From Podarcis gaigeae (lineage: Eukaryota), in assembly GCA_964106915.2 (NCBI GenBank), contig OZ066924.1: a stretch of DNA of 64,000 bases, one strand, 5' to 3'. The position numbers were made by a program, and so were the translations under genes. Shown here in pieces: positions 10,665 through 38,849 of this stretch. Position 1 is the first letter of the stretch, and the number at the start of each line of letters is the position of its first letter. The notes under the pieces were generated by a model. The model saw only the letters and a program-made list of their open reading frames with translations. It was not told the origin of the DNA and ran no database searches.

Positions 10665-13600
10665 GTCCTGACCTGCTGGCTTCCCTTAATGCTTAGCAGC
10701 CTTCAACTGGAGTATTTTGGCATGCTCTGTCTCTGCGGTTTGTCTTTCATGCTCACAAATCAGAGGATCGGTAGACTCCTACATGTCAATTGTTTCAACT
10801 GGAATTGAGCATTGAGGGATTCACTTGGGGGGGGGACGGGGGACACAGAACTACTTACTTTATGGTGAAGAATCTTATTTGAAGGGCACGTGGTTAGGGA
10901 GCCTGTTGAATTATTTTGTTCAGCAGCGACTTCACCAAATTGAAGCACTCAAAGCTGAAAATATTTCTGCCCTTGAACTCTTTCCCCCCGTCAGGGTCTT
11001 GAGACAGGCTAGAGGGAGGCAGAGCAGTAAGTGCCGAGCGCCTTGCGATTCCTTCTTCTGCCCTCCTGCCTCATCCAAAGAGAACCCTGGCATCTCTCCC
11101 GGCTGAAGCCAGCTCTGGCTTGGGGGTTGGGAGTATCCCTGGCTGGGATTCTGCTTTGCACGAGAGGCAGAAATAGGAAAAGCTTCTTGCTGCCTCACAT
11201 AATTGTTGTGTGAACCCACTTGTGAAGCTGACAAGGAAGAACGAGTGACGGAGAGTCGCTCCTCAGGGAGGAATGGGAGTGCTGAAATTCACTCTTGTTT
11301 GATGTCTTGCTTTGCCATTCTAAGTCCCAGGCTGGGCACTTGGGTCCCGGTTTTGCTGAAGCCCCGTTTGCCAGGCCCTGGAGTTTAACTGGGAGTGAAA
11401 AAAGGCAGCCTTCCTCTCAGGGGTGCACATTGCTGCCCCTGTTAGAGTCCACAGTCTTGGAAAGGGGCGTGAACTTTCACAGTCAGCTGCCTGGAAATGG
11501 CAATCTAGCACAGATTCACCCGAGTTCATTTCTTTTATGGAGATTGTTCAGAAACATAAAATCAGTGACACAGGAGGCTTGCAGGTGGTTTGCTTTTCTT
11601 TTTGGGTGTCACCAGGACAGCTTTTAGCGGGCAGCCTTCGTTGTCCAAGACATCACATACCCAAGTTCCCCGTGCAAACAACTGGCATGCTTCAAATTTC
11701 CTTGCAGAGGAGTCTGGAGGGAAAGAGATCTGAGGAGCCTGGCATGGGCCGCGGCCGGCCTGCAACTCTCCCAGGGGCGCTGGCGTCACCTTGGATACAG
11801 AAGCTGCCTTGCCTCTTGCCGTTTCATGTCTGCCTGGCTAAAAACCTGCTTTGAATCCTCGTGCGGAGCAGAGACAAAATATCTCGTCGTGCTGTCAGAA
11901 ACCAAACTTCATTCTCGCCAACAAGAAACATGTTTCTTAGCATATAGATCAAATAGTGGCCAGTCCACTGCCCCCCTTGGGCATCTGTGCCCCCAGTTTC
12001 ATTTTCCCCCAGAAGACTTTCCAAGCACATTTCAAGTGTTTGCACTTTGCACCCAGTTGGTCAAATGTCTTCTGAATCTCGCATTTTTCTGGCTGCAATG
12101 TATCTGCTATTCCTTGATCTATGGAGAATGTTACTGGAATTTTCATACCTTGTTCCTAAGAGTAGGTTTCCATGTCTGTTGACTTTTGCTTCTAGATTGT
12201 TCAAAGAGTAGGCTAGTCTGTGTAGGCTTACTTTCGCTTACTCTTTCGCTTACTTACCTTTCTGAAGGAAAATTGTCACCTGCCAATTGTTGAAATGCTT
12301 CTAACGTTAACTAAAATTAATGGGTGCCTCAGTTTTGTTCATAGAGCTTATCTTGATGGAGGCATTAGTGATAAGCTTTCTTAGCAAGTAGGAGAATGGG
12401 AAGGTCTTTCAAGGTGGCTTCTCTCCCTTCCGTAGGAGGAGGCGGTTAGGATGACAGAGCCTTGTAGCAATCAGCACTGGTTACTCAAGGCTGAGTGACT
12501 TGACAAGTTCTATCACCGGCTTTTTGTACCAATCAGTTTGTGTTCTGTTCTTGTCATTCATCCCCCAGAAAGCTTTGTTGCTTTCTGCCACATGTGTCCC
12601 CTCTGACTGCCATGTAACTAGGATGTCATGGGACCTGTAGCTTGGCTTGGGATGCCTGAGTCCCTTTACATTCCCAAATGCATTCCTTGGCACAAGAGGC
12701 TGTGCCAGGCTGAGCCTCTGCAACGGCCCCCATGAATCTTGTGAGAGCGATGTAGGAAGCTAGGAGTCAGGCCCATTGAGCTCAGCATTGTCTGCCCTGA
12801 TCAGCAGCTGTAGCATCTCCACATCTGTTTATTTTGCATCCTTCTCTTTGCTTCCCGTTTTCTTCTTCTATAAACATTTTGATCTGAGTCTCTATTCCCT
12901 TCTGAGCTTGGTGAGCGACTTGCTAGCGCATGTGCTTGCTCTGGCTGGAGTTTAGAATATTTCCCCTTTGATAAGCGTTCTCATTCGGCTCTCTGCCTTC
13001 CGAAACGTGATTCATCCAGCCGCGTAGTGCCTGCTTCAGCTCTCGCTGAGATTAGCAGCTTGCTTATTGGCAGATCAGGCTTTAGAAAATAAACAGTTTG
13101 GGAAGCAAGCGACGGGGACAGAAACTGTCGTCCTGAAGTGTCATCAAATTGCAATTGCAATCTTTGCTTGCCAGCCTCCGGGGATGATGGAGCCAAGAAA
13201 GCAGCATCATCCCGGCAGGTTGGCCAGGCCCTGTTTGAAGCAGGCGTAGTCCTCCCTTGGCCATAAAAGGTGCCGTGTAAGAATTCCCAGCAAGTGTCAG
13301 AATTGCCGCATGTCGAGAAGGGCTGCCATAGCAACCTTTCCTTTGGCACTCAGCTGTGAGTTTTCATTCTTCGGCTTCTGCTGTAGCCTTGCAAGCCTAA
13401 CCCAAAGCAAGGCGGCCAGGTTTGACTCGCAGGATTAGGCCCACCCAGCCCATGCTCTCCAGGCTTACAGGCATGAGAGAGGAGCCCGGAGGCCTTCTTG
13501 CTGATCCCTGGCCTCAGGTTCTCCAGAGCGAGACGGCTACCAAAGACAGATGGAAAACCCATTTTAGCCCACCTTCCATGGCTAATAGCTTTGCCCGTGT

Positions 13601-16778: not shown

Positions 16779-18256
16779 TGGACTTCCTGGCTCTGCTCCG
16801 AGTGCCTGTTCCTCTCCTCCTCCTCCTCCTCTTCCTCCTCCTCCTCCAGGACCCTTCAGCACCCACTATTTTACCCCTATTTATTTTTAAGGAACAACTG
16901 CAAATGTTAACTCTCGCCAGGTTTATGGTAAATCTTTCTTACCGATGCAAAATAATAGTTACAGAAACTGGCTGAGTTTCTTGCTCACTAGGCCAGTCGC
17001 AGTTGGTGTAGAATTATGTAATTGTCCAAGGTTTCAATTCTGTGAAACCTTGCATATTTCTCAGTTGCGAGGAGGTGGCCCAATAAAAATGTCTTCTGTA
17101 TTATATGCGTATCTCATGCCACTAGTCCCCACTGGAGTAACAGCAAGGAAAGAGGCACCTATCTTCTTCCAAACCGCTTAAGTTTTTTTGCGCAATGAAG
17201 AGGCATGTAAATTTTGTTAAAGTCATAAAAAGAAGTGTATTCCTGCCTCCTAGGAGATTGCAATCTAACCTTCAACATGGGGAGGGGGAGAACGTTCTGT
17301 TCACTTGCCTGTATCTTCATTAAGGGATGAGGACTAAGTGGTTGTGCTGAGCCTTCCCTTAACTGATTTTAGGATATTAGCAGATGACCTTAAAGCTATA
17401 AAAAGAAAGCTTCTGTGTGCAGGCAAGGCCTTATCTGTGTGTTCTTTCATCATTTTTCTTGTGAAAATGATAGCTGCACACAGACAGATCTGTGCCCATA
17501 CAAAGACGTACCTTGAAGCTGGAACTGGCTTGTGCCTGCGCCTCTTAGGGAGCAGGGCAGAGCTGCTGGCTGCCTGCCAAGGAGCACTTTGGGCAGGTAA
17601 TGGATAGGCCAGGATATGGTACCTGAGGGGGATAAATAGAGAGGGCTCTGCTGCTAAGACTTCAGTTTTGATAAAATTCCGGTCTCCGTGGTGGAAAAGG
17701 AAACCATTCTCATAAAGCAAATTTGGGGAGGGGGGGCTGAAGCTGAAGGGATCCTTTACTTGTTTGCAAAAGTCAGGGAGACCTTCCTGCTCACCACTTG
17801 GGCCCCAGGACCTTCATTCAGTTGGAAGGCTGAAATGGAACAGCAGGTTATACCGGCATGCTTGCGAAAATAGATTTGTCCTGCTGCACGGGTGCAATTT
17901 TGTTGGATTACGTGGCCCAAGCTAGTGTGTGTGTGTATGTGTGTGAATGTGTGCGTCGCTTTTTTCTCCACTGACTCCGATACACAGTGTCTCTGTCCCT
18001 TCTCTTGACAGCAGCTTCTGATGAGTCTTAATCCTTGGCCGAGAGAGCCTTGCTGGGCGGGCAGCGAGGGGCACAGGCCTCTGCCGCTTAGTGGCATGAT
18101 GAGAGGGCGCCAACACGGCCGCTGAGGATGTGTGCCGGCAGATGCACCCTAAGGCTAGAAGATGACATTGCTTCTGTGCTTAGAACGTCTGCTGTGAAAC
18201 TCTTAACTGGGCAGCCCTCTCAGAAGCAGAAGGCCCTGCTGTTTCTGGAGGAGAAG

Positions 18257-20603
18257 ATGAAGAAGCTTCTGCAAGGGCCGGCGAGCGAGCTCTCCCTGAG
18301 CCAGAATCACCACCAGCAGCTTTCCCTCGTGGAAATAGAAACGGACACCTTTGTCTGTGGCGTCAATAGGAAATCTGCAAGCAGTGACTTTTCCGCTGCT
18401 CAGGGGAGGAGCCCTGGGACCAGGGAGGCCAGTAATGGTGGGCTGGACTGGGATGGATACATCGAAGTCCCACGGGCGCTAGTTCCAAGCCAGTGTGACT
18501 TAGGGGGCGTCTCCGGCTGCCTGGCCTCAGAGAGCCTTCTGGAGCAAATGGAGAGCCCCGAGGAGCAAGCCGATCTCGCTGCCCTGAGCCTTGGCACCAA
18601 CTGGAGGGGAGTTGCTGGGGAAAGAGAAGGGGAAGGGCCCTGCCCTCCAAGCAAGCCCCTCGCCTACACTCCCTGCAGCCCTGGGCCCAGAGACCGCTCT
18701 GCCGATGTCATTGAGTACATCGTGAAAGAGCTCCAAGGGATAAGTCGCATCCAGACCGAGATTGCTGAGCTCCAGCAGCACCTCACCTTGATCAAAGGCT
18801 CCGTGGACGAAGTCTCCAGCTGCGTGGACACTGTTCTGAGCGAGATTGAGGGCCTGCAGAGCAGCTCTGGCCCCACCAGCAAAAACTCCCCGTTGCCAAA
18901 GGCCAAGGCCAGGGAGCCCCTCCTGGGAGGGCCCATCAGAGAGCCAGTGTTGTATTTTTATGGCATCCCAGAGCAGGAGGGGGAGAACACCAAGGAGCTA
19001 GTCCACCGTTTCTTGTCAGAGTACCACTGTTTCAATGGCATTCAGCGTAGCAAGTACATCAAGGATGCTTACAGATCTGGTGCAGCAACAGGCAAGCAGC
19101 TGGCCCCACGACCCGCTGTTGTAAAGCTTGCTAACGCTGAGCAGCGAGACTTCATTCTCCAGAAATCGATTCTTTTGCAAAGTGCAGGAGTTACCATTGT
19201 GGCCAGCAGTGAGCAAAGCCAGCAGAACGGCCAGGTGGGTCCTGGGGCACAGCTGGGCACCTTGCCCTCGCCAGGCCAGAGTGGGAACCACTGGGGCTCC
19301 TTGCACATTCGTGGGGAAGTGGTCAGGACAGATGGAGATGGGCAGCTCCAGGTGGACTCTTGCCAGGCTCAGCAGGAAAACGCTTGCCAAGAGGTTCACC
19401 ACCGCATAGGGGAGAGGCTTAACTTTCAACCGAAATCCACCCTACCTAGGAAGAGCAACTTAATTGCTGAACTTGAAGAAAAAGTAGGGAGAGTTGTACA
19501 AATAATGGGCACTAGTGAGCAGACTTTGCACAGAAGCAGCTCTTCCAGTGGAGTCCTTGATGCGTCCCACAAGAAGCTGGAAGGCCCTGGGCATGAGAAC
19601 AAAGGCAGGGATTCCTTGCCATCCCCGGAGTGCTTGGGCAAGGTGCCCGCCTTGTGTGAGGGAGGAGGGGGACGTGCTTCAGATGCTGAAAATGCCACCA
19701 AGGGCAGCTCCTCTCCTGTGGAAGAGGACCAAGCAGGAGGGCTGACTCCAGGGGAAAGCGAGACGGACTGTGATGCCACCACGCTGGAGTTTCTCAGTCC
19801 TGAGCAAGTCAGTCTCCTGGAGGAGGCACCGGTGGCCATGACCACTCCCGGCTGTGATGGTGCTCTGCGCAAATTGGTTGACAGCAGTGAGACGCTCAAA
19901 GACATGATCCAGATTGACCTGAACGAGCAAGACCCAACCGATCAGGTCTTCAGGGATGTCCTAGAAAATTCCCAGTACTTCCTTGAGCACTCTCGGGACA
20001 GCATTGATCTCGTGGACATGAGGTTTTACACTAACAAACTGGGCAAAGCACTGAATCACTTCCGGTCTGCGCTGCAGGTGGTGTTCCACAAACTGGAGAC
20101 CGGGGACCCAGAAGTCCTCCTTGAAGGGGAAAAGAGCTTCCATATGAACAGTGAGCCAGCTCCTGCCCTCCGTAGCCCAAGTGTGCACGGCAGCTTGGAT
20201 ACCTTTGCTGAAACCCCCCCTAGTCAGTCTTCTGAGAGCCAGGCTAACACGACTGTGAGCAGTGACAGTGTGGGCCTGATTCAGAGAACTCTTCCCAGTG
20301 CTTCATTGCCTCTTGACGAAGCTCCGGTCCCCGACCTGGTGCCCCCACCGGATTCTGAGAGCTGTGTGGAGCAGCCCTTCCCCTCTGGAGAGGCCCAGCA
20401 GGATCCGGGTTCTGCACCTGTGCAGCCCGGCGGGTGCCGACCTATGAGCCTCGAGAAGGTGTGTGCCGAGACCATCTACCTGAACAAGTGCATCAACAAC
20501 TTCAAGAATGTCCTGAGGGAAAAGAGGCAGATGCGTCGGAGGCTCTTGAAGGAACTGGCCCAGGAGGCAAGCTGGACTTCCTCGGCTGAAGAGATTCATT
20601 CAG
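18257..20603 (+). CDS. UNC13B: bMunc13-2-specific large N-terminal coding exon (coiled coil, ORF1p-RRM-like segment, two calmodulin-binding helices)
   Basis: 835-codon ORF 18128-20635. ATG 18257 (MKKLL) matches the recalled rat bMunc13-2 start MKRLL; ATG 18128 is an in-frame alternative. In-frame TAG at 18089. Donor CAG|GTACTC after 20603 (phase 1). Probable acceptor tcttgacag|cag at 18011/18014. Confidence 0.9.
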
Positions 20604-23600
20604 GTACTCCCAAAGTTCTTGAGATTTGCTGGTGAAATGCTTGCTCATTTTTTGTCAGAAAGTTTAGCAGCTGCAGGCAGAATGATTAAATAGAAATGGT
20701 TTATTGAAGTTTGGTCATAGATAGCAGATGATAAAAGCCAAAGACAAAGGCTGCCCTATCTCTGCACCCTTAACAAATGCAAAAAAACACACAAAACTCC
20801 AGTTTCTGGAGGTCTGCCAAATGATTTGTGATGTTCTATCTCCAAGGAAGCAGACATTGACTTCAGATCTGCTTCTTGGCAAACTGAAAGCATGTTGGGA
20901 AAGTGTTTCCAATACCATCCACTTGGAAGCACGAGCTTTTCCATGTCTCTTTACTTTCACAGGAAATATTGAACTAGGAGCCAGTTGCCATTTCCCATAT
21001 AAATTTGCCAGGGAAGCTGAAATCGCCTGAAATGTTTAAATAACCACCTCCAAGGAAGAGCTCCGCTAGAACACTGTTTCCCTCCATGTGCCCCTTGAGA
21101 AATCCACATAAGAGGTGTTCTGTTGGAGTGCAGAATTCATGTGGATCGTACCCTCCATTATGTTTGTCATGTGCCTTACTTCAAGAGCCCTCTTCTGTGG
21201 AGTTTATATTGAGGACTGTTCAGATGATAATCAGTTGTGGGGTCCACGTGAGCTGCTTCTTAGCGATTGTAGGCACTTGAGATTCCAATTGGGTTAGGCT
21301 TCGTGTTTTATCTTTGTGGGTTTGTGAAAGGGGAAGAGCAGAAGCAAAGGGGAAGAGCAGAAGCAAAATTCATCAGAAGCGTCACCCAGCGAGATTCAGG
21401 GAGCTGCTTTGGTCCTTATGTACTACTGAGCTGCAAAAGGACCATGTCTTGGGGGCGGGGGGGGCACCACCTGCTCACTCGCTAAAATAAGCAAAAGATT
21501 TGCACATAGCTGACCCTTGGGTATAGTGGCAAAGGCGCTTTCAGCTCCCCCCTAAGGAATGCCCCACCTGATTCCAGACACTCATGTGTGATGCATGTTT
21601 TCTGAAATTGCGTCCACGTGGGCCCACAGTAGCCCCCTCCACCACACTGGACAGCAGCGCCTGTCTCCAAGGATAAAGATTAGGCTCACTCTCCCCTCCT
21701 CCTTTTGCTGTGTGCATTATTACAAAGACAGAACATCATGCCTAGGACAGTTTGACACATTGCCCCGTGTGGGAGAATGACTTCTCTCAGAACTCTGCAG
21801 TCCATGCGCCCAGGCCAGAACCACAGTGGCTTCCCACAGCGGCAACATCAAGTCGTAGTGTAGTCTGCATGCACATCTCCCACATTTATGGGGCATGCCA
21901 GATGCACACATGGAAGGCACGCAGTGCTTCTGCAGTGTATGAAAGGGCTCTTGATGGTGGGATGACAGCAACTCCCACTTTCCAAGACAAGCCTCATGTC
22001 TTCCTCCAAACTTCATCTTTCCCTGCTTAGAGCGGTTTTCCAAATACTTTTAACGTGTTGTGTCGCAGCTGTGCTTCGGAAGGAAGAACACCAAGTTGAA
22101 CAAGTGTTGGGCTTGGGAGAGCTGGACTCTCATCCTTGCTCACTCACAGGCTGAAGGCTGCTTCACACATTAGGGGAACAACCACCTCCCTGATGCACAC
22201 TTTTCTTTGATGCTTGAAGGCGAGATGCATGGAAGGAAGACGTGGGAAACTTGCAGGAGCTGTGATTGGCTGCAATTCCCACTCTGGGCAGGCTGGAACC
22301 TCTTGCCATTTGATTTCTGCCGTTCTAAAACAGGGTTGTGGGGGGTTTCCTCCTCTGCAGGACTAAAGGAAAGCAGCACGGCACTTTCAACACTTTAAAT
22401 GATTTTCATAAATCATGGGTCGTAAAATTCTCTAGCAGAGTTATGGATAGTGCAGAAGGTTTGAGGCTCAATATTACTGTGGAAATAGTGGTTTTTATGA
22501 GGCAAGGATCCTGCCACAAAATGGTCCCAGGCAATGATAATTCTAGTAAATTAAAATGCCCTAGCCATCCATCCTGTGGCTAGAAAATTTACTCCAGGTC
22601 GTTATAAAATCAGCTTATTAGGGTTGGAGGCAGAGAAGTTATTTTTGCTGAGGGCTGGCAAAAGTTTGGAGCATTTGCCATCTTCCTTCATAAGAAACCT
22701 TGATCTTACTCAGAATAGCTCGTTTCTAAGTAGAGGCAGTTTCTGACTGCAAACCACATTAGCCTTTTGTGTTCAGGTAACAATTAAGAACAACAATGGA
22801 AGCCCTTGGAAATCAATGGCTGACATTGTGGCGCCATTGGGGAGCTTGTGACAAACTATTCATTTTCCTAATTTCTTGTTCTTTGATTTGACAACAAATA
22901 TTTACCAAAACTGAAATGGGAACAGTTGCTAAAATCTGCCAGCAATTTAGTGCTAGATTTTTCAAGTAATGCTTCAGTTCTCTTTAGAAAACAGATGGGA
23001 GAAGGATTCATTTCTCCTCCACCTGTTAAATCACTGCTCATGTGTGTTCCTTTTGTGCATGTTTTCATTAGGGAATGGAAGATTTAGAATTTGAAACAGG
23101 AGAGAGAGAGAGAGAGAGAATGAGAATGAGAATGAATGGGGCAAAGGTGGGCCTGATGTTTCAGACTCCTAAGTCCCCAATTCTTTCTTTGTTCTTTTAT
23201 GCCCAAGAAAAACTAGATGACGTTTACTAAGAAAATGTGCTTTTGTTGTAATGAAGAAGCTTGATTCAGAGCACACCCTGTCAGGCATTTTCCTTGGGAC
23301 AGTTTCAGATGAACTTCAGAGGTGATGGTTGGGTGCGTTTCTGGTATGTCAGCTCCTTGTTTGAAAATTAGATTCTTCTGGCATGGGGCTCTCTCTCTAG
23401 GCGTAATCCTAACCCCTTTACCAATTTTATTTCACTTTTTGAAAGCCAAGGGTCATCTACTTTTTGGATAATAACTGCCACACGGGCTCCCCCCCCCTTT
23501 TTGTTTTGGCCAGCAGTCACCATTATGGATTAAAATTACTATCCATGCAACTTTCTTAAAAGTAAAAAGCCATATTCTACTGCATGATGCATGTACACTC

Positions 23601-23726
23601 AAGTTATGGTCTAATCTCAAATTAAATCAGATTGAACATGCTCCCCCTGGATTTGGGCTTCCTGGGCCCTTTGATCAATATCAGGTTTTTGGGGAGGGAA
23701 GCTGAGTAGCTGTGAGATACGGAGAT

Positions 23727-23747
23727 GGTGCTGTCCAAGGTGCTGAA
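23727..23747 (-). promoter_or_regulatory. RE1/NRSE (REST-binding) site
   Basis: Reverse complement TTCAGCACCTTGGACAGCACC: both half-sites TCAGCACC and GGACAG intact with the canonical 2-nt spacer. Confidence 0.75.
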
Positions 23748-24258
23748 TCGAGGGCTTTGGCTACTGAGCTCCCAGTAACACTCATCCAGACTTCATTTTG
23801 CACCACACTTTCCAGGCAAAGGTCCATGCTTTAAACTCCATGTCCAAACAGTTTGTTTGTTTGTTTGTTTTGTCCTGGCGCCTCCCCGGTAAAAACCCGC
23901 ATTTTACTGCTGAATCGGAGCAAATAGCAATCTGCGGGGAACCCAATTGTGGTTTGCTTTATTCGTTGGTAAAACATGGGCTCTACCTGTGAAAGCAGCA
24001 GGGAAGAGAAAACGAAACTGCTCAGACATGGAGCTTTAAAGTGCAGACCTGGGCCCAGAAACGCAGCGCAAAAGGAAGTCTGCCTGAGCCTTAAGAGTGC
24101 GTCAAGTGGGGAGGGAGGGAGAGAGAGAAAGCCCCCCCCCTGCCTGTGCCACTCATTGGCCTTTCATTGGACTGCTTGGTGTAACAAATGTTCCAAGAAC
24201 CACTAATAACCTCCCTAACATTTTTTTATACATGAGGTGGAGTGTTTTGAATTGAAGG

Positions 24259-24415
24259 AAAAACAAAAAAATTCCTTCCTTCCAGTGTATCTGAAGAAGT
24301 GTGCATGCACACGAAAGCTCATACCAAGAACTGACTTAGTTGGTCTTTAAGGTGCTACTGGAAGGAATTTTTTTGTTTTGACTATGGCAGACCAACACGG
24401 CTACCTATCTGTAAC
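24259..24415 (+). mobile_element. Penelope/Neptune-like pLTR insertion
   Basis: Same family as 8456-8656; short inverted 5' piece; 12-bp TSD TTGAATTGAAGG at 24247-24258 and 24416-24427. Confidence 0.8.
24287..24324 (+). ncRNA. minimal type-I hammerhead ribozyme-like motif
   Basis: GUAU-CUGAAGA-A-GUGUG(CAUG)CACAC-GAAA-GCUC-AUAC: stems I and II perfect, palindromic AGCU stem III, one extra A after the core. Confidence 0.65.
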
Positions 24416-25249
24416 TTGAATTGAAGGGTTTGCTGAAAAGCTGTATGCATATCCATTTCCCTGCTAGCTTGCTTGTCCTGAGGGACAGGACCTCGCAGCA
24501 TTTTTTTTAAAAAAAAATGTTTAGAGAAAGCTTCAATAGTGTTTCATGGAATTGTTATTTAGATGTGATAAATCAGTGTGTGGTGTTTTATCCAACCTTC
24601 TTCGTTAAAAGTATTAGCTTCTGGGACAGTGCTGCAGTTTTGTAACAGAAGCATTTGGCATTTCCCTTCCTTATGGAACAAAACGTTGTCTGAATGTTGT
24701 GTCACCACAGCTTCCCTGGACCCTTTTGCCCCAGGCTCAAAGACATCCTCTCCGGAGGATGTGGGAACCAGCCAACTCTCAGGATCCCTGGAGCTTTGTG
24801 GGTCATCATTAAGGAAAGGGGACATGACTTCTTAAGTGAGTCAAGATTTTTGTAGGTGCCTGGTACTGTTGTGAATTTTGAGGCAGGTGTGACTATGCTA
24901 TGCTAATTAAAAGGTTTACTTGCAATTAAGATTCTATGCCCACAATATGTTGCTGATGCTAAGAAGAAAATGAAATATGAGTGTTTTATTGAAACTGCCA
25001 CAGAAATTCATTTTAAAAACATAACCACCCCAACCTTCCGGCACCTTCAGTGTACAAAGTTGAGCCTATGTTTTTCAAGCTAAATGGACCTTTCCTACTA
25101 GGGATTTTGGGGGCGATACAGAAATTTTACATCTCTGCACTTCTTTGCTTCATTTTCCATACTTGGTCAACAGCATAATTTTTCCGTGTTAACTGTGTGA
25201 CTCTCCTTTCCTCTCCTTTGTGTTCCCCCCACCCCTTTCTCCTTTGCAG

Positions 25250-25272
25250 AAGGAAGTAGAGGAGAACTTCAG
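25250..25272 (+). CDS. UNC13B: 23-nt microexon, (E)GSRGELQ
   Basis: Long pyrimidine tract, then tttgcag|AAGGAAGTAGAGGAGAACTTCAG|gttata. Converts phase 1 to phase 0. Peptide EGSRGELQ resembles recalled rat EGKREALQ. Confidence 0.88.
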
Positions 25273-26203
25273 GTTATATACTGTTCATTCTAACCAGTGT
25301 GTCTCCTACTTTTGACACTCCAGTGTGTTATTCGTGCATGCCCTGTTGAATTGTCACTTGGCTGTTTGGCTGACCCCTGAAGTACCCCCCCCCCCAAGTC
25401 TCTTGGCAAGTTCAGCATGCAACAGTCTTGGGAGGAATTCCTGATCTTGTGTATGAACTGAGAGGAGTCTGTTCAGTGCAGGTAGCTTTTATAAAGGAAG
25501 AAAACATTCCTACTTAACACCTTGTTGATGTTGCAAATCCGTGTTTGCTGTGCGTACGCAGTTCCTTCCCAGTCCCAGCAGAGGATAAATGTACTGTGTG
25601 CCATGGGAAGGTTACCTGGAGTGTGTGTGTATCTGTGGGTCACAGAGGCTCAACTTTTACCTCTTGGCCAGCAGTTCTTAAAATATAAATATTATTTTGT
25701 GTTTGTCACTTTGGCAGAAGACTTGCTGCTAATTCTAAGGATTGGCAGAGCCATAATTCCTTCTGGTGCTTCTGGGCAAAATTGTTTTGTGTTTCTTGGA
25801 AGCACTGTGCAAACTCATGGGCAGAAACGGTCTTTAGGGGTCTGCAGGCTACAAGCAACAAGGGCTTTATCCTTGTGCTACCTTGAACTCAAAAGACTCA
25901 TTGTCCATTTCTAGCCATTTTATTCAGAAGTCAGACACCAGAGGGATGAAGCCCAAGAGCAACGTTCTGTAAAAAACAAAGCAGGTTTCTAATTCAGGTT
26001 TGTCTACATGTTTCTTAGCAAGATCATGCATTTGACTTTTTGGTTTAAGATTTGATAGCCTCCATGCACAGTTTCCAGGGTGAGAAGGCTGTGCATCCAG
26101 AGTTTGTCTAAATCGTGCTTCCCCAAGTGGGCTTGCTTTATTTGACTGCCGATTTAGACTCCAAATACATGTTCTGTCACTTTAATCTGACTGCATCCTT
26201 GCA

Positions 26204-26469: not shown

Positions 26470-28051
26470 CAGCAGACTTAAGCCCAGGCACCTCAGAGGA
26501 GACCTGCAGCTGGATCAGACCCACGGTCTGTCTGGCCTACCATCCTGTCCTTGCAGATGCCTACAGCTAGTTCAGAAGCATGACAGGAGTGAGCCAGCAC
26601 TTGTGCTGCCCTTCTCGTGTGTCACAGGAGTGAGTCAAAGTGGCCACGTCATCTCGGCTAGCGCTGGCGCCGTGCCTTCACATGAGTGGATTTCTTGAAT
26701 GCCACATGATTGATCTGTGACTTGCTCAGCGCAGGCAGCTTTCCTGTTGATTCCTCCACCTTTGCTCTTGTAGGAATTCCTCTGAGAGGCAGCCCTGGGC
26801 AGCTGCGGATTCCCAGGGAGGGGTCTGGGTGGAAATTGCCCTCCTCTGAGACAAAGGGCTGCTTAGCCTGGCCAGAGAAAGTGTTACTGGGGAAATGAAG
26901 CTCCCCTTCTCTCCTTTGTCCATGAACTCCTGAACTCCTCATTCAAAGGGCAGTTAGATTGCCTTCCTTGGCGCAGTTAGCAGAAACTTGGTAGTTGGCT
27001 ACTGAGGAGGCCAAGAACAAGGTAGCAATTGACCAAAAGGGGCTCCTCCTTTCACCTTTCACTATTTTTTTGTTTGTCTGCCAGCCTCTGTTCCACTTGT
27101 TGGCTGCTCTGGTTCCAGGACCTTAGAATAAGTGGCTTCCTATTGAAGTAGCCTGCCTCCTCTCGGTGCTCATTCTGGGACTCATCCTGGTGGCAGCTTC
27201 CTGCACAGACTGTGGGGCAGCTCATGTGAGAGCCTTGGACGCCAGCCATGGAGGTGGCAGAGCCCTCTCTCTCTCACCCCCTCCTCAGGCTGGGGAATTT
27301 GAGCAGACATTCTCTCTCCTGGAAGTGGATGCCGCTGCCTGCATGAGCCTTTTGTTCCCTTGTGCTCTCTAGGCAAGGATGGCTGCTTTTCAGGAATTTG
27401 TCTAGCATGTATTTGTTCTTCCAGGAAACAGGCTGCTACTAAATGGTTGCTGCTGCTGCTGCAGCTCCTTGGTGGTGCAGGTGCCAGGAACAGCTGGCAG
27501 GCTCCTCTGGCACCTCACAGAAGCTCCCCCCCCCCCCGGCTGTTTCCTGGCTTAGGGATTGAAAAGCAGTGAGAGACCAGGCACTTTCCCCTGGTTTCAG
27601 AGGGGCCGAAGGAAAGGCAGATGCGTGACTCAATTCCGGTGTCTTTAGCCTTACGTCCGTTTGTTCTGTTTGTTTGTGTGCTCTCAATAAATAAGTATTT
27701 TGGAAATGTTCTCGGCAACATTAGGACTTGCTCTAGGATCTGCTCTTGCCAAACTCTTGGTTGTTGTTTTTTTAAAAGAAATGTTTGCGGGTTGATTCCC
27801 CCTCAAAAGCACATTGCACTGAACAGGCTCTTTTTGCCCCTCTCCTGTGTGCCGCCGTGTCCACACCACTGGGCAGCACAGCCTCCCTGCCGTCCTCTGA
27901 GGTGCTAATGAACATGAAGCGCTTTGTGTCCATTTTCGTGCATGAAACGTCCTCCCTGATTTTGAACTCTGCAGCTGGCTTGAACTTTGCTCAGCACAAT
28001 TAATTCTTCTCTCTCTCTCTCTCCTTCTCTCTCTCTTAAAAAAAAATTAAG

Positions 28052-28098
28052 GGTCCGGATGATGGCGATCCGTCCAAATCACCGTGGTTCAAAGGAGG
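28052..28098 (+). CDS. UNC13B: 47-nt exon GPDDGDPSKSPWFKG(G), first exon shared by b and ub isoforms
   Basis: ttaag|GGTCCGGAT...GGAGG|gtaagt; resembles mammalian I(S/P)DDGDPSLPQWLPEG; phase 0 to 2. Confidence 0.88.
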
Positions 28099-31276: not shown

Positions 31277-31355
31277 GCCAGCCGGGGGTCTCTATGGCAT
31301 CGACAGCATGCCTGACCTGCGCAAGAAGAAGCCCACCCCACTTGTCAGTGACCTG
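31277..31355 (+). CDS. UNC13B: exon [26 protein letters not shown]
   Basis: ttccag|G...CTG|gtgag; conserved Munc13 motif [11 protein letters not shown]. Confidence 0.96.
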
Positions 31356-34066: not shown

Positions 34067-34141
34067 TCGCTGGTCCAGTCCCGGAAGGCCGGAATTACCT
34101 CAGCCATGGCCACCCGAACTTCTCTCAAGGACGAGGAGCTG
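34067..34141 (+). CDS. UNC13B: exon SLVQSRKAGITSAMATRTSLKDEEL
   Basis: tttcacag|TCG...CTG|gtaagg; 75 nt, phase 0/0. Confidence 0.96.
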
Positions 34142-34973: not shown

Positions 34974-35273
<300 letters not shown>

Positions 35274-38702: not shown

Positions 38703-38849
38703 NNNNNNNNNNNNNNNNNNNNNNNNNNNNNNNNNNNNNNNNNNNNNNNNNNNNNNNNNNNNNNNNNNNNNNNNNNNNNNNNNNNNNNNNNNNNNNNNNN
38801 NNNNNNNNNNNNNNNNNNNNNNNNNNNNNNNNNNNNNNNNNNNNNNNNN
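38703..38849. other. assembly gap (147 N)
   Basis: Run of n; intronic, and the flanking exons join in frame. Confidence 1.

What the first reader, a model, noticed from the sequence alone, without database searches (positions are those of the whole stretch)
25250..25272. 23-nt microexon as a binary frame switch between bMunc13-2 and ubMunc13-2
Seen: the b exon ends in phase 1 and the shared exon at 28052 starts in phase 0. b with inclusion stays in frame; b with skipping hits TGA at 28060-28062. A phase-0 upstream exon, as the ub calmodulin exon must be, stays in frame on skipping; on inclusion it shifts and stops at TG|A across the 34141/35049 junction, far upstream of many junctions (NMD target). 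RBFOX TGCATG at 25335-25340 and GTGTG motifs flank the exon. Inference: one splicing decision licenses one isoform and destroys the other. I recall a TDP-43-sensitive frameshifting exon in human UNC13B near this position, which may be the ortholog; unverified. The ub exon is outside the window.
Basis: partly seen in the sequence, partly recalled or inferred. Interest (0 to 1): 0.78.

Follow-up and report, generated by a model that had tools for sequence, protein, structure and literature searches.

The report
Frame-fixing 23-base exon of Munc13-2
A real 23-base exon in a lizard's UNC13B gene keeps the brain form of the synaptic protein Munc13-2 in frame and would wreck the ubiquitous form; it matches the "frameshift exon" already described in human UNC13B, so it is largely known.

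Summary
The window is the UNC13B locus of a Podarcis-like lizard.

- **Frame logic.** The large b exon ends at 20603 in phase 1. The exon at 25250-25272 is 23 nt with an AG acceptor and a GT donor. The first shared exon starts at 28052 in phase 0. If b transcripts skip the exon they stop at TGA 28060-62. A phase-0 ub exon that includes it stops at TG|A across 34141/35049.
- **Transcript and annotation evidence.** A transcript contig of a sister species carries the 20603→25250 joint. RefSeq b-isoform models carry the 8-residue insert, from gar and frogs to mammals. None of 83 ub models has it.
- **Link to the human exon.** The FSE primer in Brown et al. 2022 spells KRGALQ, as in primate b isoforms. 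It matches a mammal's exon at 19 of 21 bases. This is therefore the ortholog of the human TDP-43-repressed, NMD-targeted exon.
- **New here.** Five amniotes share the 23-nt length, a weak GTT donor and a distal branch point. They also share a GU run next to a UGCAUG 53-95 nt downstream.

The frame switch is real, but it is annotated and largely described. Whether it is actively regulated in lizards was not tested. The scan had not noted this exon before.

The parts
18128..20603 (+). Large bMunc13-2-specific coding exon. The ATG used by the Podarcis muralis RefSeq model is at 18128, and the Anolis model starts at the later in-frame ATG at 18257. The exon ends in phase 1 with a carried G.
   Evidence: tblastn gives 96% identity to P0050 and 99% to P0049. 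The contig of run X1 covers the exon up to 20603.
20604..20609 (+). Donor of the b exon, CAG|GTACTC.
   Evidence: Joint 20603→25250.
25189..25193 (+). Candidate distal branch point TTAAC, 58 nt upstream of the exon. No AG occurs between it and the acceptor.
   Evidence: The TAA core is invariant in five amniotes. An AG-free zone and a yUnAy site at -44 to -67 are present in all five. Its function is inferred.
25200..25249 (+). Polypyrimidine tract (86% C+T) ending in TTGCAG. A UGC sits directly before the AG.
   Evidence: TTGCAG is kept in 4 of 5 species.
25250..25272 (+). 23-nt purine-rich coding microexon. In the b frame it reads (G)AA GGA AGT AGA GGA GAA CTT CAG, which is E GSRGELQ. Entered in phase 0 it reads KEVEENF plus AG.
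   Evidence: RNA joint. RefSeq models. Orthologs of 23 nt in L001-L004.
25273..25278 (+). Weak donor GTTATA. The T at +3 is conserved in all five species.
25297..25328 (+). Two GTGTGT hexamers at 25297-302 and 25323-328, the GU-rich element upstream of the RBFOX site.
   Evidence: P about 0.01 for two in 150 nt. A GU run lies close to or overlapping the TGCATG in four of five species, and a long (GT)n in Galemys.
25335..25340 (+). TGCATG, the RBFOX-type site 63 nt downstream of the donor.
   Evidence: It is the only invariant run of 5 or more columns in the flanking introns of four sauropsids. All five species have a TGCATG at +53 to +95.
25415..25419 (+). Second GCATG, 143 nt downstream.
   Evidence: It is invariant in lizard, snake and bird in the three-way alignment.
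28052..28098 (+). First exon shared by the b and ub isoforms (47 nt, starts in phase 0, GPDDGDPSKSPWFKG). It contains TGA 28060-62, which stops b transcripts that skip the microexon.
   Evidence: GAT-GAT gives the same TGA in Lerista and Galemys.
31277..31355 (+). Second shared exon (79 nt).
34067..34141 (+). Third shared exon (75 nt). Its last two bases, TG, begin the stop codon of the ub-plus-microexon frame.
35049..35268 (+). C1-domain exon. Its first base, A, completes TG|A in the shifted frame.

Best explanation
Bases 25250-25272 are the second coding exon of bMunc13-2, the brain-type isoform of UNC13B. It is an ancient 23-nt microexon.

Shown here:
- Its 23 nt turn the phase-1 end of the b-specific exon into the phase-0 start of the first shared exon, adding E-GSRGELQ.
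- Transcripts that start at the upstream ub promoter end their calmodulin-site exon in phase 0 and skip it.
- The two mismatched combinations both run into early stop codons. b with skipping stops at TGA 28060-62. ub with inclusion stops at TG|A across 34141/35049. Many exon junctions lie downstream of both stops.

By orthology and the literature:
- It is the lizard copy of the human UNC13B 'frameshift exon'. That exon is repressed by TDP-43 and sends ub transcripts to nonsense-mediated decay.

Inferred:
- The exon is poorly defined on its own, being tiny with a weak GTT donor and a distal branch point.
- Its purine-rich body and an RBFOX site 63 nt downstream pull it in within neurons, where the b promoter is active.
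- GU-binding repressors such as TDP-43, bound beside that site, hold it out of ub transcripts.
- NMD removes whatever mismatches arise, so only promoter-matched mRNAs are seen.
For: - Frames were read exon by exon (sequences).
- The spliced contig of run X1, a sister species, joins 20603 to 25250 with GT..AG ends. It carries the 23 letters and then continues beyond them.
- The predicted peptide is identical to the Podarcis muralis RefSeq b isoform.
- The insert is present in about 104 of 114 b-type models from gar, amphibians, reptiles, birds and mammals. It is absent from 83 of 83 ub-type models.
- The ub junction reads ...KVRLQFEE|GPDDGDP.
- Brown et al. [quoted passage not shown] It is raised by TDP-43 knockdown, UPF1 knockdown and cycloheximide, and it is shared with a brain-expressed shorter isoform. 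Their FSE primer encodes EKRGALQ and matches the Galemys exon at 19 of 21 bases and the lizard exon at 15 of 21, both compared by eye.
- In five amniote genomes the exon is always 23 nt with a GTT donor, an AG-free zone and a distal yUnAy site. A TGCATG lies at +53 to +95, with a GU run close to or overlapping it in four of the five.
- TGCATG is the only invariant intronic run of 5 or more columns among four sauropsids, where 15% of downstream columns are invariant.
Against: - No read here shows a ub transcript with the exon or a b transcript without it. The two raw-read RNA runs had no depth on the b exon or the microexon, so NMD and regulation are untested in the lizard.
- RNA support rests on one contig in one run of a related species, plus evidence-based gene models.
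- Binding of RBFOX, TDP-43 or SRRM4 is inferred from motifs only.
- In sauropsids the GU runs are short, 6-8 nt.
- The stop in the ub-plus-exon frame lies about 74 codons downstream in the lizard. Brown et al. place it at the start of the next exon in human.
Confidence: 0.85

Rival explanations
1. Plain frame adaptor with no regulatory role. The exon is simply constitutive in b transcripts. ub transcripts ignore it because their distant donor pairs with the stronger shared-exon acceptor, and ub inclusion is rare noise or a disease artefact.
For: Every evidence-based b model has the exon and no ub model does. In human tissue, Brown et al. saw no disease-linked rise in the exon. Nothing here shows ub inclusion in the lizard.
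Against: A constitutive exon would not be expected to keep a weak GTT donor, a distal branch point and an exact RBFOX site next to GU runs over about 300 million years. In human neurons, inclusion in ub transcripts responds to TDP-43 dose and lowers the protein.
Confidence: 0.3
2. Primarily a poison exon. The conserved function would be dosage control of ubMunc13-2 by unproductive splicing, and the coding use in b transcripts would be secondary.
For: Inclusion in the ub frame gives a premature stop. NMD sensitivity is shown in human. Intronic regulatory motifs are conserved.
Against: The b exon ends in phase 1 in all five genomes, so b cannot be made without the exon. The peptide E-G-x-R-G-x-L-Q is kept from gar to mammals, with synonymous changes such as AGA/CGA, GAA/GAG and CTT/CTC. 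This points to coding constraint in the b frame.
Confidence: 0.1
3. Chance AG...GT pair that happens to fix the frame, and not a real exon.
For: None beyond its small size.
Against: The spliced joint in RNA-derived contigs, RefSeq models and 23-nt orthologs in four other genomes.
Confidence: 0.01

Closest known systems
Human UNC13B 'frameshift exon' (FSE), Brown et al. 2022, Nature 603:131 (PMC8891020)
   Same: It sits in the same place, just upstream of the first exon shared by all isoforms. It has the same frameshift and premature stop in ub transcripts, and a brain-expressed isoform shares it. The printed FSE primer encodes the b-frame peptide and matches the mammalian ortholog at 19 of 21 bases.
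   Different: In human the stop is reported at the start of the next exon. In the lizard it comes three exons later. A mammal (Galemys) has a long (GT)n tract downstream, whereas the lizard has only two GTGTGT hexamers. TDP-43 and NMD dependence are untested in the lizard. The paper treats the exon as a mis-splicing event and does not state that it is the obligatory coding exon of bMunc13-2.
bMunc13-2 / ubMunc13-2 alternative-promoter isoforms (Brose 1995, Koch 2000 and Betz 2001, as cited in Kawabe 2017, PMC5379939)
   Same: Two promoters give two unrelated N-termini that are spliced onto a common C-terminal part. The b form is largely brain-specific.
   Different: [quoted passage not shown] They do not spell out the phase mismatch or the 23-nt adaptor.
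Neuronal microexons (3-27 nt; Irimia 2014; Quesnel-Vallières 2015, PMC4387716)
   Same: The size fits, the flanking introns are conserved, a UGC sits before the acceptor, and the gene is neuronal.
   Different: Its length is not a multiple of three. The published SRRM4-dependent Unc13b microexon is a different exon, 6 nt long and lying between exons 13 and 14.
Poison (NMD) cassette exons
   Same: Inclusion in ub transcripts gives a premature stop upstream of many junctions.
   Different: The same exon is ordinary coding sequence when the transcript starts at the b promoter.

Membership tests
UNC13B b-isoform coding microexon | Lies between the b-specific large exon and the first shared exon, on the coding strand, with AG/GT sites | tested here: met
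UNC13B b-isoform coding microexon | Spliced to the b exon in RNA | tested here: met
   Joint 20603→25250 in the contig of run X1, which is one run of a related species.
UNC13B b-isoform coding microexon | Encodes the conserved E-G-x-R-x-x-x-Q insert of b isoforms and restores the frame | tested here: met
   The peptide is identical to the Podarcis muralis isoform X2.
Ortholog of the human UNC13B FSE | Sits directly upstream of the first shared exon and downstream of the calmodulin-site exon | tested here: inconclusive
   The downstream neighbour is confirmed. The ub exon is outside the window. The order ub→b→microexon is implied only by the Hemicordylus model P0054.
Ortholog of the human UNC13B FSE | Sequence correspondence with the human exon | tested here: met
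   The FSE primer printed in PMC8891020 encodes EKRGALQ, against EGKRGALQ in primate b isoforms. It matches Galemys at 19 of 21 and the lizard at 15 of 21. The comparison was made by eye, and no human letters were sent to a tool.
Ortholog of the human UNC13B FSE | Frameshift with a premature stop in ub transcripts | tested here: met
Ortholog of the human UNC13B FSE | Repressed by TDP-43, and transcripts degraded by NMD | not testable with these tools
   Only GU motifs were seen. The raw-read runs were silent at this locus.
Neuronal microexon programme (RBFOX / SRRM4 / PTBP) | Length of 27 nt or less with conserved flanking intron elements | tested here: met
Neuronal microexon programme (RBFOX / SRRM4 / PTBP) | Neural-specific inclusion that depends on those factors | not testable with these tools
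   No tissue-resolved reads were available.
Poison exon (AS-NMD) | Inclusion creates a stop more than 50 nt upstream of a later exon junction | tested here: met
   The stop lies at the 34141/35049 junction. The next junction is 220 nt on and at least 10 further exons lie in the window. This holds in the ub context only.

The most novel reading that the evidence does not exclude
The exon would be an ancient, actively used post-transcriptional lock, conserved since early bony vertebrates. Neuronal factors, namely RBFOX at the conserved UGCAUG and perhaps SRRM4, would force its inclusion. Whatever promoter fires, only b-start mRNAs (ELKS-anchored Munc13-2) would then survive in those neurons, and ub-start mRNAs (RIM-anchored) would be destroyed. 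TDP-43, bound on the abutting GU run, would be the brake that lets other neurons keep ubMunc13-2. On this reading, the UNC13B loss seen after TDP-43 depletion is this normal switch thrown in the wrong cells.
Probability: 0.25. Interest if true: 0.6.

Novelty: already known. Interest (0 to 1): 0.3.

Why it matters
The finding ties together two literatures that treat the same 23 bases differently. [quoted passage not shown] ALS/FTD work describes a TDP-43-repressed 'frameshift exon'.

The exon is the obligatory coding adaptor of bMunc13-2. It also has a conserved composite of a GU run and UGCAUG beside it. Inclusion in ub transcripts after TDP-43 loss may therefore be misuse of a normal neuronal programme and not a purely aberrant event. 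That idea is testable.

For genome annotation there is a practical point. Models that miss the exon, including several Ensembl/UniProt entries such as the Anolis one, patch the frame with false splice sites.

Tried and rejected
- The published SRRM4-dependent Unc13b microexon is not this exon. It is 6 nt long and lies between exons 13 and 14.
- A motif scan and tblastn for the ub calmodulin-site exon in the window found nothing.
- The raw-read RNA runs X23 and X24 gave no depth at the b exon or the microexon. They covered only a dispersed repeat, so they say nothing on ub inclusion or b skipping.
- The contig of run X5 ended before the b-exon donor.
- Orthologous DNA for Pogona, Podarcis raffonei and Lagopus could not be fetched. 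The proteins were not on record or the gene range was too long.
- Rfam found no RNA family anywhere in the window.
- Five literature searches found no paper stating outright that the FSE is the b-isoform coding exon.
- The in-frame 'ub + b exon' route of the Hemicordylus model P0054 is closed in this window by TAG 18089-91.
Frames were followed exon by exon by reference, and the junction codons were read by eye.
- The N run at 38703-38849 was left untouched.

Full report
**Locus and species.** The window carries UNC13B (Munc13-2) on the + strand.
- A stop-free stretch at 18092-20632 encodes the bMunc13-2-specific N-terminus.
- It is 96% identical to the Podarcis muralis RefSeq isoform X2 (P0050) over 825 residues. 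It is 99% identical to a P. raffonei isoform (P0049) over 255 residues. The source is therefore a Podarcis-like lacertid lizard.
- Downstream shared exons were mapped by tblastn and their borders read from the sequence. They are 28052-28098, 31277-31355, 34067-34141 and 35049-35268 (the C1 domain), with more exons out to 63393.

**Check of the observation.**
- The b exon has its donor GT at 20604 and ends at 20603 with one carried base, G, which is phase 1.
- Bases 25250-25272 read AAGGAAGTAGAGGAGAACTTCAG. They are preceded by a 50-nt stretch that is 86% pyrimidine and ends in TTGCAG, and they are followed by GTTATA.
- With the carried G the exon reads GAA GGA AGT AGA GGA GAA CTT CAG, which is E GSRGELQ. 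It hands over in phase 0 to GGT CCG GAT GAT..., which is GPDDGDPSKSPWFKG.
- If the b exon joins 28052 directly, the frame reads G|GG TCC GGA TGA, with the stop at 28060-62.
- If a phase-0 exon enters the microexon, the frame reads as follows (with letters):
  - KEVEENF, then AG|G;
  - VRMMAIRPNHRGSKE, then G|GC;
  - [25 protein letters not shown], then TG|T;
  - RWSSPGRPELPQPWPPELLSRTRS, then TG|A.
- That stop sits on the 34141/35049 junction. The next junction is 220 nt further on and at least ten more exons follow in the window, so the usual rule predicts nonsense-mediated decay.
- These frames were followed exon by exon by reference.

**Is the exon used?**
- Read laying was run on window 19800-25799, which is 6,000 letters. 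One 1,282-letter contig of run X1, from a species about 98% identical, covers the b exon up to its end.
- That contig then jumps from 20603 to 25250. The tool prints the joint as 20600→25247 with 3 ambiguous letters, and the skipped piece has GT..AG ends.
- It places 27 letters on the far side. These are the 3 ambiguous letters, the 23 of the exon and 1 more. The contig then runs on for about 27 letters that do not lie on this stretch.
- The spliced joint shows that the run is RNA-derived.
- The two raw-read RNA runs of another relative had no depth on the b exon or the microexon. They say nothing about rare forms.

**Gene models.**
- A library search with the b exon and two word searches returned 251 proteins.
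- Of the models that carry the end of the b exon, about 104 of 114 have an 8-residue insert, E-G-x-R-x-x-x-Q, exactly at this junction. Five of these were missed by my pattern and counted by eye.
- Examples of the insert:
  - EGSRGELQ in lizards, turtles and crocodile;
  - ERSRGELQ in snakes;
  - EGGRGELQ in birds;
  - EGSRAEYQ and similar in frogs and salamander;
  - EGKRGALQ in placentals;
  - EGSREEDQ in gar.
- The models without it are, with one exception (Glossophaga, P0164), entries with no NCBI record (UniRef-only or metaclust) that patch the frame with odd splice sites. The Anolis entry P0001 is one of them.
- None of 83 models carrying the calmodulin-site exon has the insert. In Podarcis muralis, P. 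lilfordi, P. raffonei and Zootoca they read ...ARARWIRAINKVRLQFEE|G(P/L)DDGDPSKSPWFKGG.
- The first 433 residues of the ub isoform find nothing in the window, and a motif scan finds no calmodulin-site exon. The ub exons are outside the window.

**The human 'frameshift exon'.** Brown et al. 2022 (PMC8891020) report the following:
- UPF1 knockdown or cycloheximide raises it further.
- TDP-43 crosslinks lie near it.
- A 'shorter isoform UNC13B-210', expressed in brain tissue but not in cultured neurons, shares the exon.

The primer they place 'within the FSE' reads, as printed, like the sense strand of this exon. In the b frame it spells EKRGALQ. Primate b isoforms have EGKRGALQ at this junction (P0152 and P0165). 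It matches the last 21 bases of the Galemys exon at 19 positions and those of the lizard exon at 15, with the same TTCAG end. I made this comparison by eye and sent no human letters to a tool. The recalled exon is therefore the ortholog. I found no paper that says outright that this exon is the obligatory coding exon of bMunc13-2. Kawabe et al. [quoted passage not shown] The SRRM4-dependent Unc13b microexon of Quesnel-Vallières et al. 2015 is a different exon of 6 nt.

**Conserved anatomy.** Orthologous DNA could be fetched for a bee-eater (L001), a garter snake (L002), a desman (L003) and a skink (L004). In all five genomes the following hold:
- The exon is 23 nt and purine-rich, with the core GAGGA invariant in all five (the longer run GTAGAGGAGA is invariant in the four sauropsids).
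- The b exon ends ...S/A|G followed by GT, which is phase 1.
- The donor begins GTT, a poor match to the consensus.
- No AG occurs for 60 nt or more upstream of the acceptor.
- A yUnAy site lies 44-67 nt upstream, a candidate distal branch point.
- A TGCATG lies 53-95 nt downstream. A GU run lies close to or overlapping it in four of the five, and about 24 nt upstream of it in the skink.

Among the four sauropsids only 15% of the downstream intron columns are invariant. The only invariant run of five or more columns outside the exon and its splice sites is TGCATG at 25335-25340. The mammal has a (GT)n tract of about 30 nt running into its TGCATG, which fits the TDP-43 crosslinks reported in human. 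In the lizard window alone the motifs are only mildly unusual, with P about 0.06 for one TGCATG and about 0.01 for two GCATG or two GTGTGT in 150 nt. It is the conservation that carries the weight. GAT-GAT at the start of the shared exon gives the same TGA for b skipping in Lerista and Galemys.

**How it most likely works.**
- Shown: the exon is a frame adaptor. The b start needs it and the ub start cannot tolerate it.
- Shown in human by others: inclusion in ub transcripts leads to NMD and less protein, and TDP-43 holds the exon out.
- Inferred: the tiny exon with a weak donor and a distal branch point depends on its purine-rich body and on RBFOX bound downstream. These are available in neurons, where the b promoter fires.
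- Inferred: GU-binding TDP-43 next to the RBFOX site opposes this, and NMD clears mismatched products.
- Not testable here: whether cells use this as an active switch, or whether the exon is simply constitutive for b and ignored by ub.

**Verdict.** The observation and its frame logic are correct, and the orthology guess is confirmed. The exon is annotated in close relatives, and its human copy has been characterised. Interest is modest.

Noticed in passing
window 24283-24420: A dispersed repeat that looks like a SINE lies in the intron between the b exon and the microexon. It shows very high depth in all four RNA runs (thousands in contig word depth, about 200 in raw reads), with loose ends on both sides. 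It is therefore a multi-copy element and not a local transcript. Rfam finds no family there.
   Followed up: partly
window 17990-18130: A good acceptor (ttctcttgacag|C) lies at 18011/18012, upstream of the b start codon. The b frame is closed by TAG 18089-91, and a short upstream ORF (ATGATG...TGA, 18097-18126) ends just before the ATG at 18128. The large b exon may therefore be a second exon behind a non-coding first exon.
   Followed up: no
P0054 (Hemicordylus capensis isoform X3, 2473 aa): This RefSeq model joins the whole ub N-terminus (residues 1-419) in frame to an extended b exon, then the microexon and the shared part. That would be a third legal combination. In this window the same route hits a stop.
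   Followed up: partly
window 28005-28051: The acceptor of the first shared exon is unusual. A (CT)n run is followed by nine A, then TTAAG. The CU repeats look like PTB-type sites.
   Followed up: no
P0001, P0055-P0058, P0094, P0117, P0133, P0135, P0136, P0138: Entries with no NCBI record (UniRef-only or metaclust) for the b isoform in Anolis, Varanus, several birds, turtles and Naja miss the 23-nt exon. They repair the frame with false donors or by reading into the intron.
   Followed up: partly
L003 about 12210-12242 (Galemys): A (GT)n tract of about 30 nt begins 64 nt downstream of the mammalian microexon and runs into a TGCATG.
   Followed up: partly
PMC8891020, Methods: The 'reverse primer within the FSE' is printed in the sense orientation of the exon.
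   Followed up: no
window 25385-25667: A low-depth contig of run X1 covers intron sequence downstream of the microexon. It could be pre-mRNA or a trace of DNA.
   Followed up: no
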